Positions 7,379 through 8,598 of a stretch of 49,245 bases of DNA are shown here, piece by piece (within the stretch, counting starts at the first letter, position 1; each line of letters begins with the position of its first letter). The position numbers and the translations under genes were made by a program. The notes below the pieces were generated by a model. The model searched no databases, was not told where the DNA came from, and worked only from the letters and a program-made list of their open reading frames with translations. The stretch comes from Octopus bimaculoides. Its lineage: Eukaryota. The DNA lies in assembly GCF_001194135.2 (NCBI RefSeq), contig NC_068992.1, positions 28,395,915-28,445,159 of the forward strand, given 5' to 3'.

Positions 7379-8598
7379 TTTTCTTTATTGGCCACAAAGG
7401 TCGCATTCGGAGAAAAATGGGACAATATAAAACAAGGGACGGCCGGGGCTTAACACAAAATTACGTTTATACACCAAAAACAATAATTAACAAGAATAAG
7501 TAAACATTAAAATTCCCCAAAAGTATCTTCTGTACATTCAGCCTCGTTCACCACACAACCTCTTTCGCCATAGCCACCAGACAGAAGAAAACTGCCTTCA
7601 TTTCCCGGTCAAAACAAGGCAACGAGGCGATTGTCACGATGGACTTGTTTGATAACTCGGCGTCAACAGCTGTTCGAGAAAGCTCTACAAGTCTGCAATA
7701 TCCGGATACTGGATGAGTGTATGTAGAACGGTTTCATCGCCCTGCGCACATCTCGGATATGTCCGTCTGACAGCGCTTCTGTGGCTGTGGAGGTTGTCCC
7801 GAACCGGCAGAGCTACCCCCGACAATACTGTCAGGCAAAGGATTTCTAGAAATTATCCATTTGCCCCGTCCAAAAGTCCTCAGGAAAAGACCAACTGGTT
7901 GATCCCTTCCGAAGCACAGAGTTTTCCCCGGGCACGTTGTCGCTCTTGCCCGCCATTACTTCCCCATAAGACTCCTATGTGGGACTTCCATTGACCGCAT
8001 TGCCCGACGGGCTTTGATCACTTACCGACACTCCAAGTGTCAAACACCCTTTCACGGTCTACGCTAAATCCAGGTCTGTAGCTCTGTCGATGAGATGAGC
8101 TGTGGAAAATCCTGTCTGATAAACGCCTACTGCATCTGCTCAACGTCAAAGAAAATTTGGAGATGGCGCAGTCTCGACGCGTGCCTGCGCATCATTAGCC
8201 ATGGCATGCCCAGTTCTCCTCTCAGTGGTTGCTGACAGCAGATGGATCGTCTGACGTGTAGAACATGTCTCTTCCACTGAAATCGGAAGAGCAAGGGCTC
8301 TAGTTTGGTCAGCCACGAAGCAGGGCTAGGACGACGGTCAGGCGGTAGCAGACGATGAAAGAGATATACGTATTCACCACTTCCGTCCACCCTCCAAGGA
8401 CAGCTTCTTCTCTGTCCATTTCTGGGCGAGACTGGCTGCTCTGCTCATGACCCCACTTAGTTCTTGTCCATCTGGTGGGTCTGGGCCAAACAGTATCTCA
8501 AGCAATTTAACAGGTCCTTCCGTCCAGTACCCTACAACTCCGTCGGTCGGCATTGAATTTCCTCTCCTGGTGCTGAGCTACAGGCCCGCCACCTTAGC
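7379..8598 (-). mobile_element. 5'-truncated L1-Tx1 clade LINE (end of RT, zf-RVT-like C-terminus, 3' UTR), frameshifted
   Basis: Minus strand: GYWTEGPVKLLEILFGP..KWTEKKLSLEG..WLTKLEPLLFRFQWK..RRSICCQQPLRGELGMPWLMMRRH; CPRCAQGDETVLH-type Zn motif near 7700-7760; AATAAA at 7385-7390; (AAT)n on both flanks. Confidence 0.88.

What the first reader, a model, noticed from the sequence alone, without database searches (positions are those of the whole stretch)
7379..7445. SINE-A1 tail matches the 3' end of the Tx1 LINE: candidate stringent SINE-LINE pair
Seen on the plus strand. Tx1 end: TTTCTTTATTGGCCACAAAGG...GGGACA...AACAAGGGAC. SINE-A1 at 21502-21550: TTTCTTTATTGCCCACAAGGG...GGGACA-AACAAGGAC; similar at 13080 and 37577. 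The terminal 21 nt differ at 2 positions and two further blocks are co-linear. Established: SINEs often borrow the 3' end of their partner LINE, but L1-clade elements are usually relaxed poly-A recognisers. Inference: a Tx1-driven SINE family using a specific 3' signal. Both elements also share the same polarity relative to (ATT)n.
Basis: partly seen in the sequence, partly recalled or inferred. Interest (0 to 1): 0.75.

Follow-up and report, generated by a model that had tools for sequence, protein, structure and literature searches.

The report
Octopus SINE borrows an L1/Tx1-like LINE tail
A short parasitic repeat (SINE) in this octopus-like genome ends in the same ~45 bases as a family of L1/Tx1-type jumping genes (LINEs), which marks that LINE family as its likely copying engine; this is a new example of a well-known arrangement, in a LINE group where such pairs are rare.

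Summary
On the minus strand, window 7379-8598 is a 5'-truncated, frameshifted LINE (ORF2 C-terminus with a zf-RVT/CCHC motif). Its last ~65 nt resemble the 3' tail of three SINE copies (13079, 21501, 37576, all minus strand).

The tail belongs to the LINE. Independent copies from Octopus sinensis, Argonauta hians and several unnamed public assemblies carry it directly after ORF2 and the 3'UTR. The O. sinensis copy matches the SINE tail at 39 of 43 positions, against 30 of 40 for the window copy. Only SINE positions ~194-235 are shared, so this is not a SINE fragment abutting a LINE.

The LINE belongs to the L1 superfamily. The "Tx1" label could not be tested by phylogeny and rests on indirect evidence.

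A 4-bp stem with a CUUGU loop shows compensatory changes, but it is thermodynamically negligible.

Verdict: a new member of a known kind, a stringent-type SINE/LINE pair shared by Octopus and Argonauta. The window's own LINE copy is old and is not the active partner. The other two SINE tail classes here also look related to this LINE group.

The parts
7379..8598 (-). 5'-truncated, frameshifted L1/Tx1-group LINE copy (ORF2 from the RT thumb to the C-terminal CCHC/zf-RVT motif, plus a short 3'UTR)
   Evidence: Three-frame translation. tblastn of P0015 residues 494-852 onto 8595-7539. Weak zf-RVT hit, E=0.084. Homologues P0001 and P0002.
7379..7445 (-). LINE 3' tail, the region of the finding: ...GTCCCTTGTTTTATATTGTCCCATTTTTCTCCGAATGCGACCTTTGTGGCCAATAAAGAAAA
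7390..7402 (-). Candidate short hairpin GACC-UUUGU-GGCC (degenerate in this copy; GGCC-CUUGU-GGCU in the better-preserved LINE copies)
7128..7378 (-). (ATT)n microsatellite directly following the LINE 3' end in the sense orientation. It is interrupted by a non-repeat island of about 70 bp at roughly 7262-7335.
8599..9051 (-). (ATT)n microsatellite, with an assembly gap at 8724-8910, directly upstream of the LINE 5' truncation point and in the same orientation
21501..21709 (-). SINE-A copy. The LINE-like tail module is 21501 to about 21561; the last 45 nt are 21501-21545.
13079..13293 (-). SINE-A copy, 5'-truncated, sitting in the tail of a SINE-B copy. The tail module is 13079 to about 13139.
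37576..37797 (-). SINE-A copy, full length. The tail module is 37576 to about 37628.
5202..5459 (-). Second fragment of the same LINE group (ORF2 residues ~664-745), with no 3' tail
35875..36653 (-). Third fragment of the same LINE group (ORF2 N-terminal part plus C-terminal part, internally deleted), with no recognisable tail

Best explanation
SINE-A is a subfamily of the abundant octopus SINE, which carries Pol III A/B-box-like motifs in its head. Its 3' module, about 45-70 nt, was copied from the 3'UTR end of an L1-superfamily LINE family, most probably what repeat pipelines call L1-Tx1. That LINE family is shared by Octopus and Argonauta. The inferred mechanism is the standard stringent-type one. 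The LINE ORF2 protein recognises its own 3' end: the element ...GUCCCCUCUAUGUUUxxGCCCUUGUGGCUAAUAAAGAAAU, possibly including a short GGCC-CUUGU-GGCU hairpin, usually followed by a few AUU repeats. It then starts target-primed reverse transcription there. A Pol III SINE transcript carrying the same end is copied in trans. Shown here: the tail homology, that the tail is intrinsic to the LINE, its conservation across octopod lineages, and L1-superfamily membership. Inferred: trans-mobilisation, the role of the hairpin, and the Tx1 label. The LINE copy in the window is an old, broken member of a diverged sublineage. The actual partner resembles the O. sinensis and Argonauta copies.
For: The motif occurs 4 times in the window against 0.01 expected. 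Over the last 45 nt, SINE-A (21501) matches the LINE tails as follows: O. sinensis L005 39/43, Argonauta L006 37/43, L009 33/43, L002 33/41, window 30/40, all with 0/2000 shuffles. The tail sits directly after ORF2 and the 3'UTR in independent LINE copies with different flanks: window, L002, L005, L006, L007, L009, L012, and a partial tail in L015. Only SINE positions ~194-235 match those loci, and the SINE body is absent. L005 has a 7-bp duplication, ATTGGAT, at both ends, read directly; this points to an ordinary LINE insertion ending at ...AATAAAGAA. Argonauta loci carry many SINE-like elements with the same tail, some with a body homologous to the octopus SINE. LINE identity is supported in three ways. 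The close relatives P0015, P0004 and P0016 have RVT_1 plus zf-RVT. More distant relatives (P0038, P0040, the L014 LINE) add the Exo_endo_phos (APE) endonuclease. The best solved structure is human L1 ORF2p at E=1.5e-21, against R2 at 2e-12. For the hairpin, 87.5% of cells pair against 13-45% when the partner is slid. Three of 4 pairs have changes on both sides, and the covariation score is 0.458 against 0.148 shuffled, 0/500. The SINE-A tail, like the L005/L006 tail type, has no run of four or more T. The window LINE tail has TTTT and TTTTT, which would stop Pol III (read).
Against: Only 3 SINE-A copies and about 8 LINE tails were available, so there is no genome-wide consensus and no age comparison. 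The LINE fragments in the window are about 70% identical to each other, while SINE-A copies are 81-90% identical, so co-activity is not shown. The hairpin is only 4 bp. Single-sequence folds are not more stable than shuffles (z from -1.2 to +1.3), and the RNAalifold consensus energy is about zero. I derived the structure from these same sequences, and the compensatory changes correspond to only 3-4 family-level events. The tRNA origin of the SINE head was not confirmed by ARAGORN or Rfam. I could not screen the other octopus LINE clades (RTE, Dong-R4, CR1) for the same tail.
Confidence: 0.75

Rival explanations
1. Both the SINE and this LINE family acquired the tail from a third element, for example another LINE clade with (ATT)n ends. 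That third element would be the real driver, and the L1/Tx1-like LINE only a fellow carrier.
For: SINE and LINE modules are known to be exchanged in a mosaic fashion (PMC11481361; PMC4824008). I could not screen RTE, Dong-R4 or CR1 consensus sequences of octopus.
Against: The tail is conserved at the end of this LINE group across Octopus, Argonauta and several diverged sublineages, while the rest of the 3'UTR diverges. A LINE needs its own 3' signal, so a LINE that keeps the tail for that long is itself a competent driver.
Confidence: 0.12
2. The shared sequence is real but is not a recognition signal. The LINE recognises only the terminal A/U-rich repeat, in a relaxed L1-like way. The conserved CCTTGTGGCTAATAAAG block is kept for another reason, for example the AATAAA polyadenylation signal of the LINE mRNA.
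For: AATAAA is invariant in all LINE tails. The hairpin has negligible stability. SINE tail classes B and C lack AATAAA yet are far more numerous in the window.
Against: A Pol III SINE has no use for a polyadenylation signal, yet SINE-A keeps the whole 45-nt block at 36-39 of 43-45 aligned positions against L005. LINE copies are not followed by poly(A). Conservation extends 5' of AATAAA into the stem and loop, with compensatory changes.
Confidence: 0.1
3. Artefact of juxtaposition: a 5'-truncated SINE-A fragment happens to lie next to the LINE 3' end, so the 'LINE tail' is really SINE sequence.
For: SINEs in this window often insert into each other's tails, so juxtapositions are common.
Against: The same junction recurs in independent LINE copies in at least three taxa with different flanks. 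The SINE-homologous part always starts at the same SINE position, about 194, and no SINE body is ever present. The LINE 3'UTRs of L005 and L006 remain alignable to each other upstream of the shared block.
Confidence: 0.03
4. Chance resemblance of A/T-rich, low-complexity ends.
For: The region is A/T-rich and next to a microsatellite.
Against: 0.01 matches expected against 4 found. 0/2000 to 0/3000 shuffles reach the observed alignment scores. The best match is 39/43.
Confidence: 0.01

Closest known systems
Stringent-type SINE/LINE pairs with a common 3' tail (tortoise Pol III SINE/CR1; eel UnaSINE1/UnaL2; zebrafish ZfL2; Ohshima and Okada; Kajikawa and Okada 2002)
   Same: The SINE 3' end is homologous to the LINE 3'UTR end over about 45 nt. 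A short stem-loop candidate lies just upstream of a short terminal repeat, here (AUU)n. Several SINE families share one LINE-type tail.
   Different: The partner LINE belongs to the L1 superfamily rather than L2, CR1 or RTE. The candidate stem is only 4 bp. No mobilisation assay exists.
SINEs with L1-clade tails: maize ZmSINE2/ZmSINE3 with LINE1-1_ZM, and Chlamydomonas SINEX-3_CR with L1-1_CR (Ohshima 2012, PMC3472496)
   Same: An L1-group LINE whose specific 3' end is shared with a SINE, implying stringent recognition within the L1 group. A conserved 3' stem-loop with compensatory changes was reported there too.
   Different: Those pairs are in plants and a green alga and end in poly(A). This one is in an animal (octopods) and ends in (ATT)n or nothing.
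SINEU mobilised by Tx1-Mar in crocodilians (Kojima 2015, PMC4494074)
   Same: A proposed Tx1-clade driver for a SINE. Tx1-clade elements often insert into microsatellites, (TC)n, (TTC)n and (TTCC)n, and the window LINE copy lies inside (ATT)n.
   Different: The SINEU link rests on shared target preference and snRNA-derived heads; no LINE with a matching 3' half was reported there. Here the link is a shared 3' tail. Target specificity is not shown, since the O. sinensis copy sits in an unrelated repeat with a 7-bp duplication.
Octopus SINEs described so far (OK, OR1, OR2 of Ohshima and Okada 1994; tRNA-Deu and tRNA-Core classes in octopus repeat annotations, PMC8967140, PMC13282606)
   Same: The same kind of highly abundant SINE with Pol III box-like motifs, in an octopus genome.
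   Different: The papers I could search name no LINE partner. Most O. vulgaris SINE families are listed as unclassified. I did not test which named family SINE-A corresponds to.

Membership tests
Stringent-type SINE/LINE pair (shared 3' tail) | The SINE 3' end is homologous to the 3' end of a LINE in the same genome | tested here: met
   30/40 with the window LINE and 39/43 with the O. sinensis LINE; 0/2000 shuffles.
Stringent-type SINE/LINE pair (shared 3' tail) | The shared sequence is an intrinsic part of the LINE family, contiguous with ORF2 and the 3'UTR in independent copies | tested here: met
   Window, L002, L005, L006, L007, L009, L012 and L015. Only SINE positions 194-235 are shared.
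Stringent-type SINE/LINE pair (shared 3' tail) | The SINE has a Pol III-type head derived from a small RNA | tested here: inconclusive
   A-box-like TGGCAGAATCG and B-box-like GAGTTCAAATTCC are visible. ARAGORN finds no tRNA, and Rfam finds no tRNA even at E<=10.
Stringent-type SINE/LINE pair (shared 3' tail) | A conserved 3' stem-loop supported by compensatory changes | tested here: inconclusive
   A 4-bp stem with a CUUGU loop: 87.5% paired against 13-45% slid, and 3 of 4 pairs covary. Stability is no better than shuffles, and consensus energy is about 0.
Stringent-type SINE/LINE pair (shared 3' tail) | The LINE mobilises the SINE in trans, dependent on the tail | not testable with these tools
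   Needs a retrotransposition assay.
Stringent-type SINE/LINE pair (shared 3' tail) | Overlapping periods of activity of the SINE and the LINE | not tested
   Only 3 SINE-A copies (81-90% identical) and 3 LINE fragments (~70% identical) are in the window. A genome-wide landscape was not available.
L1 superfamily (L1/Tx1 group) of non-LTR retrotransposons | ORF2 with an APE-type endonuclease, an RT closest to L1, and a C-terminal Cys/His motif | tested here: met
   RVT_1 plus zf-RVT in P0015, P0004 and P0016. Exo_endo_phos in the more distant relatives P0038, P0040 and L014. Best PDB match is human L1 ORF2p at 1.5e-21 against R2 at 2e-12. CPRCx8Hx4C is visible in the window ORF and P0001.
Tx1 clade | The RT-domain phylogeny places the element with Tx1 references rather than L1 proper | not testable with these tools
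   No named Tx1 reference sequence could be retrieved. The representatives carry no names. Indirect evidence only: L1-Tx1 is the only L1-group class among recently active O. vulgaris LINEs, and it is the L1-group class named in the coleoid repeat set.
Tx1 clade | Target-sequence preference, common but not universal in the clade | tested here: inconclusive
   The window copy has (ATT)n on both sides in the same orientation, and (ATT)n/(AAT)n makes up only 2% of the window. L005 lies in an unrelated repeat with an ATTGGAT duplication, and the other copies have varied flanks.

The most novel reading that the evidence does not exclude
One L1/Tx1-group LINE lineage, recognised through a conserved short 3' hairpin (stem, CUUGU loop, then GAAA and (AUU)n), may drive all three tail classes (A, B, C) of the massively expanded octopus SINEs, not only SINE-A. 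Priming on (ATT)n would make new copies home into the tails of resident copies, producing the same-orientation head-to-tail arrays seen in the window. That would name the engine behind the octopus-specific SINE expansion.
Probability: 0.3. Interest if true: 0.6.

Novelty: new member of a known kind. Interest (0 to 1): 0.45.

Why it matters
SINEs make up roughly a tenth of octopus genomes (11.6% in O. vulgaris), and their expansion has been tied to octopus genome evolution. The papers I could search name no autonomous partner for them. A shared, phylogenetically conserved 3' tail points to an L1/Tx1-group LINE family as that partner for at least one SINE subfamily, in both Octopus and Argonauta. 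It would also add an animal example to the very short list of L1-group LINEs with specific 3'-end recognition: three SINEs in plants and an alga as of 2012. That bears on the idea that stringent recognition is ancestral in the L1 group and was relaxed in mammals. The claim is directly testable with genome-wide consensus building and a tail-mutant retrotransposition assay.

Tried and rejected
1. Naming the LINE clade. The homology searches returned almost no named proteins. The exhaustive representative search gave 150 unnamed relatives, and the cluster look-up of 10 of them gave no names. No supplementary files are held for the Tx1 paper, so no Tx1 sequences could be taken from it. The Tx1-versus-L1 phylogeny therefore could not be done.

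2. More LINE copies from JGI metagenome contigs. Two scans, one with a protein and one with an alignment, found nothing.

3. tRNA origin of the SINE head. ARAGORN gave 0 hits. Rfam gave 0 at gathering threshold and no tRNA hit at E<=10.

4. A larger, stable 3' structure. Single-sequence folds were not better than shuffles. RNAalifold predicts only the 3 outer pairs of the same short stem.

5. Strict microsatellite targeting of the LINE. I rejected this as a general rule, because L005, L009 and L015 are not in (ATT)n.

6. The cuttlefish relative (L013) showed no recognisable tail within about 640 nt downstream of the ORF.

7. TSDs of the SINE-A copies. No convincing duplication could be read from the flanks.

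8. The Albertin 2015 octopus genome paper is not held in the library.

Full report
**What the window is.** The 49-kb window is a gap-rich draft of an A/T-rich animal genome, full of microsatellites and one SINE superfamily. ARAGORN and Rfam find no RNA genes. The relatives of its repeats come from Octopus sinensis and Argonauta hians. I therefore treat the window as an octopod genome; that is an inference.

**Check of the observation.** The quoted strings are at the quoted coordinates. Read in the sense of the elements, everything is on the minus strand.
- The LINE ends ...GTCCCTTGTTTTATATTGTCCCATTTTTCTCCGAATGCGACCTTTGTGGCCAATAAAGAAAA, followed by (ATT)n.
- The SINE copies end ...GTCCTTGTTTGTCCCCTCTATGTTTAGCCCCTTGTGGGCAATAAAGAAAT.
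- The terminal 21-mers differ at 2 positions, as stated.
- A degenerate 21-mer search with up to 3 mismatches hits exactly the four named sites, against 0.01 expected.
- Over the last 45 nt, the three SINE copies match the window LINE at 29-31 of 40-42 aligned positions, and 0/2000 shuffles score as well.

**What the LINE is.** Window 7379-8598 (minus) is a 5'-truncated copy with several frameshifts and stops.
- Stitched together, it encodes the post-RT part of an ORF2 with the motif ...ALPVRDNL...CAQGDETVLH..., a weak zf-RVT match.
- Close relatives carry RVT_1 plus zf-RVT. More distant relatives, including a full-length element in L014, add an APE-type endonuclease. L014 also has an ORF1 with a weak CCHC knuckle, below Pfam's cut-off.
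- The best solved structure is human L1 ORF2p at E=1.5e-21, against R2 proteins at about 1e-12.
- The LINE is therefore an L1-superfamily element.
- I could not test "Tx1" by phylogeny, because none of the roughly 280 relatives retrieved carries a clade name and no Tx1 reference was reachable.
- Indirect support comes from the curated O. vulgaris repeat annotation. Its recently active LINEs are RTE, Dong-R4, CR1, L1-Tx1, Hero and R2, so L1-Tx1 is the only L1-group class there.
- Two more fragments of the group lie at 5202-5459 and 35875-36653, about 70% identical to the main copy.

I fetched the DNA around relatives of the ORF. In every copy that reaches its 3' end, the ORF and a ~150-650-nt 3'UTR run into the same terminal block:
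- L002 (an unnamed Logan sequencing-run assembly)...GATCCTTGTGGCCAATAAAGAAAA(TATTATT...).
- L005 (O. sinensis)...TTGTCCCCCTCTATGTTTGGGCCCTTGTGGCTAATAAAGAAAT.
- L006 (Argonauta)...GTCCCCTCTATGTTTTTGCCCTTGTGGCTAATAAAAGAAAT(AATTATTATT).
- L007, L009 and L012 carry variants, and L015 a partial one.

The SINE-A tail matches L005 at 39/43 and L006 at 37/43, better than it matches the window copy. BLAST of the whole SINE against these loci aligns only SINE positions ~194-235 at the LINE ends and never the SINE body. A chance juxtaposition of a SINE fragment is therefore excluded. L005 also shows a 7-bp duplication, ATTGGAT, at both ends (read), as expected for an ordinary endonuclease-dependent LINE insertion.

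**Breadth.** The two Argonauta loci (25 kb in all) contain about a dozen short elements ending in GGCCCTTGTGGCTAATAGAGAAATCTAT. Some have a body homologous to the octopus SINE, and some have a different body. The LINE tail is thus used by several SINE families, and the partnership appears to predate the Octopus/Argonauta split.

**Other SINE tails in the window.** About 20 SINE copies share head and body but carry three tail modules:
- A, 3 copies, as above.
- B, 7 copies: ...CAAAATTTCGGGCCTTGTGCCTAGAGTAGAAAAGAAT(ATT)n.
- C, 10 copies: ...CAAAATTGCTGGCCTTGTGCCAAAATTTGAAACCAAT(ATT)n.

Anchored on CTTGT, all three align without gaps to the LINE tails over about 30 nt. B is significantly similar to the L005 and L006 tails and to a 3'UTR segment of the more distant LINE in L014, with 0/3000 shuffles. 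C is weaker. This suggests, but does not prove, that the whole SINE superfamily here depends on the same LINE group.

**Structure.** A 4-bp stem with loop CUUGU takes a different form in each class: GGCC/GGCU in the LINEs, GCCC/GGGC in A, GGGC/GCCU in B, and UGGC/GCCA in C.
- It is paired in 87.5% of cells, against 13-45% when the partner is slid.
- Three of 4 pairs show changes on both sides.
- The covariation score is 0.458 against 0.148 for shuffles, 0/500.
- Against this, the stem is tiny. Folds are not more stable than shuffled sequences, and RNAalifold gives about 0 kcal/mol.
- I derived the structure from these same sequences, and the changes amount to only a few family-level events.
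- I rate the hairpin as a candidate only.

**Mechanism.** This is the standard stringent-type model. ORF2p binds its own 3' end and primes reverse transcription there, and a SINE RNA with the same end is copied in trans.
- Consistent detail: the SINE-A tail, like the L005/L006 tail type, lacks T4 runs, whereas the window LINE tail contains TTTT and TTTTT, which would terminate Pol III.
- The terminal (AUU)n probably assists priming. The window LINE lies inside (ATT)n on both sides. Six adjacent groups of SINE copies sit head-to-tail in the same orientation, and where the junction can be read the later copy abuts the earlier copy's 3' tail.
- Targeting is not strict, however.

**Comparison with what is known.** SINE/LINE tail sharing is textbook.
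- Within the L1 group it is rare. [quoted passage not shown]
- For Tx1, SINEU was assigned to Tx1-Mar by shared target preference (PMC4494074).
- Bivalve SINE partners found so far include Nimb and CR1-Zenon; Tx1 is not mentioned in that paper (PMC11481361).
- I found no paper naming a LINE partner for octopus SINEs.

The finding is therefore a new member of a known kind. Its modest extra interest is that it is an animal L1-group example and concerns a very abundant SINE.

**Limits.** The sample is small. There is no genome-wide consensus, no age landscapes, no clade phylogeny and no functional assay. The window's LINE copy is old and not the active partner.

Noticed in passing
window 13079-13472, 14009-14522, 15763-16363, 21348-21760 (minus strand); 3916-4256, 18833-19127 (plus strand): SINE copies sit in same-orientation head-to-tail arrays. 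Where the junction can be read, the 5' end of one copy, often truncated, abuts the (ATT)n or other 3' tail of the previous one. This suggests orientation-specific insertion into resident tails or (ATT)n.
   Followed up: partly
window, about 17 SINE copies, e.g. 18968, 13339, 14092 (tail B); 4041, 38007, 30404, 15761 (tail C): The two other SINE tail classes share GGCCTTGTGCC, then GAAA and (ATT)n, with the LINE tail, and the 4-bp stem shows compensatory variants. Tail B also matches a 3'UTR segment of a distant LINE relative (L014:6683-6724; 0/3000 shuffles).
   Followed up: partly
window 5202-5459 and 35875-36653 (minus strand): Two further degraded fragments of the same LINE group, about 70% identical to the main copy and without tails.
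   Followed up: partly
window 7262-7335: A non-repeat island of about 70 bp inside the (ATT)n array downstream of the LINE. On the minus strand it reads ...GCCGCAGTTACGTTGGTGTAATGGTAACACACTTGTCGCAAGC. It may be a fragment of another small-RNA-derived element.
   Followed up: no
window 9052-9083: The trinucleotide array switches strand polarity here, from (AAT)n to (ATT)n on the plus strand, just upstream of a plus-strand SINE at 9143-9262. The LINE and that SINE therefore face away from each other across one long array.
   Followed up: no
L011:1300-1462 and window 7420-7445: The LINE 3'UTRs contain tandem copies of a ~17-nt unit, TTGTCCCTTGTTTTATA. The SINE-A segment GTCCTTGTTTGTCCCC looks like a shortened version, so the LINE-derived part of SINE-A may extend to about 70 nt.
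   Followed up: partly
window 4330-4380 (plus strand): A tail-like motif, GGGGCTTGTTTAGGGAATAAAAACATAATAAAGAAAG, follows a plus-strand SINE. It may be a remnant of another element with a related 3' end.
   Followed up: no
P0005; L001, P0003, P0004 (JGI sample 3300045673): A protein deposited as 'zinc-binding domain-containing protein' of a Herbaspirillum MAG is 69% identical to P0001, a relative of this LINE's ORF2 C-terminus, so it is probably host DNA in a metagenome bin. A JGI metagenome holds open reading frames of this LINE that are 82-91% identical to each other, which hints at a recently active lineage somewhere.
   Followed up: no
window 31827-32297 (minus strand): A 156-aa ORF that looks like a fragment of a Tc1/mariner-type transposase. 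This is by eye only and was not searched.
   Followed up: no
L014:6760-6830 and 7225-7300: The sequence flanking the 3' end of the L014 LINE (GAGCCAACTGGAAGAAATATATCAATATTGG...) recurs about 460 bp downstream. The LINE sits in or next to another repeat, and the source organism of this ENA assembly is unknown.
   Followed up: no
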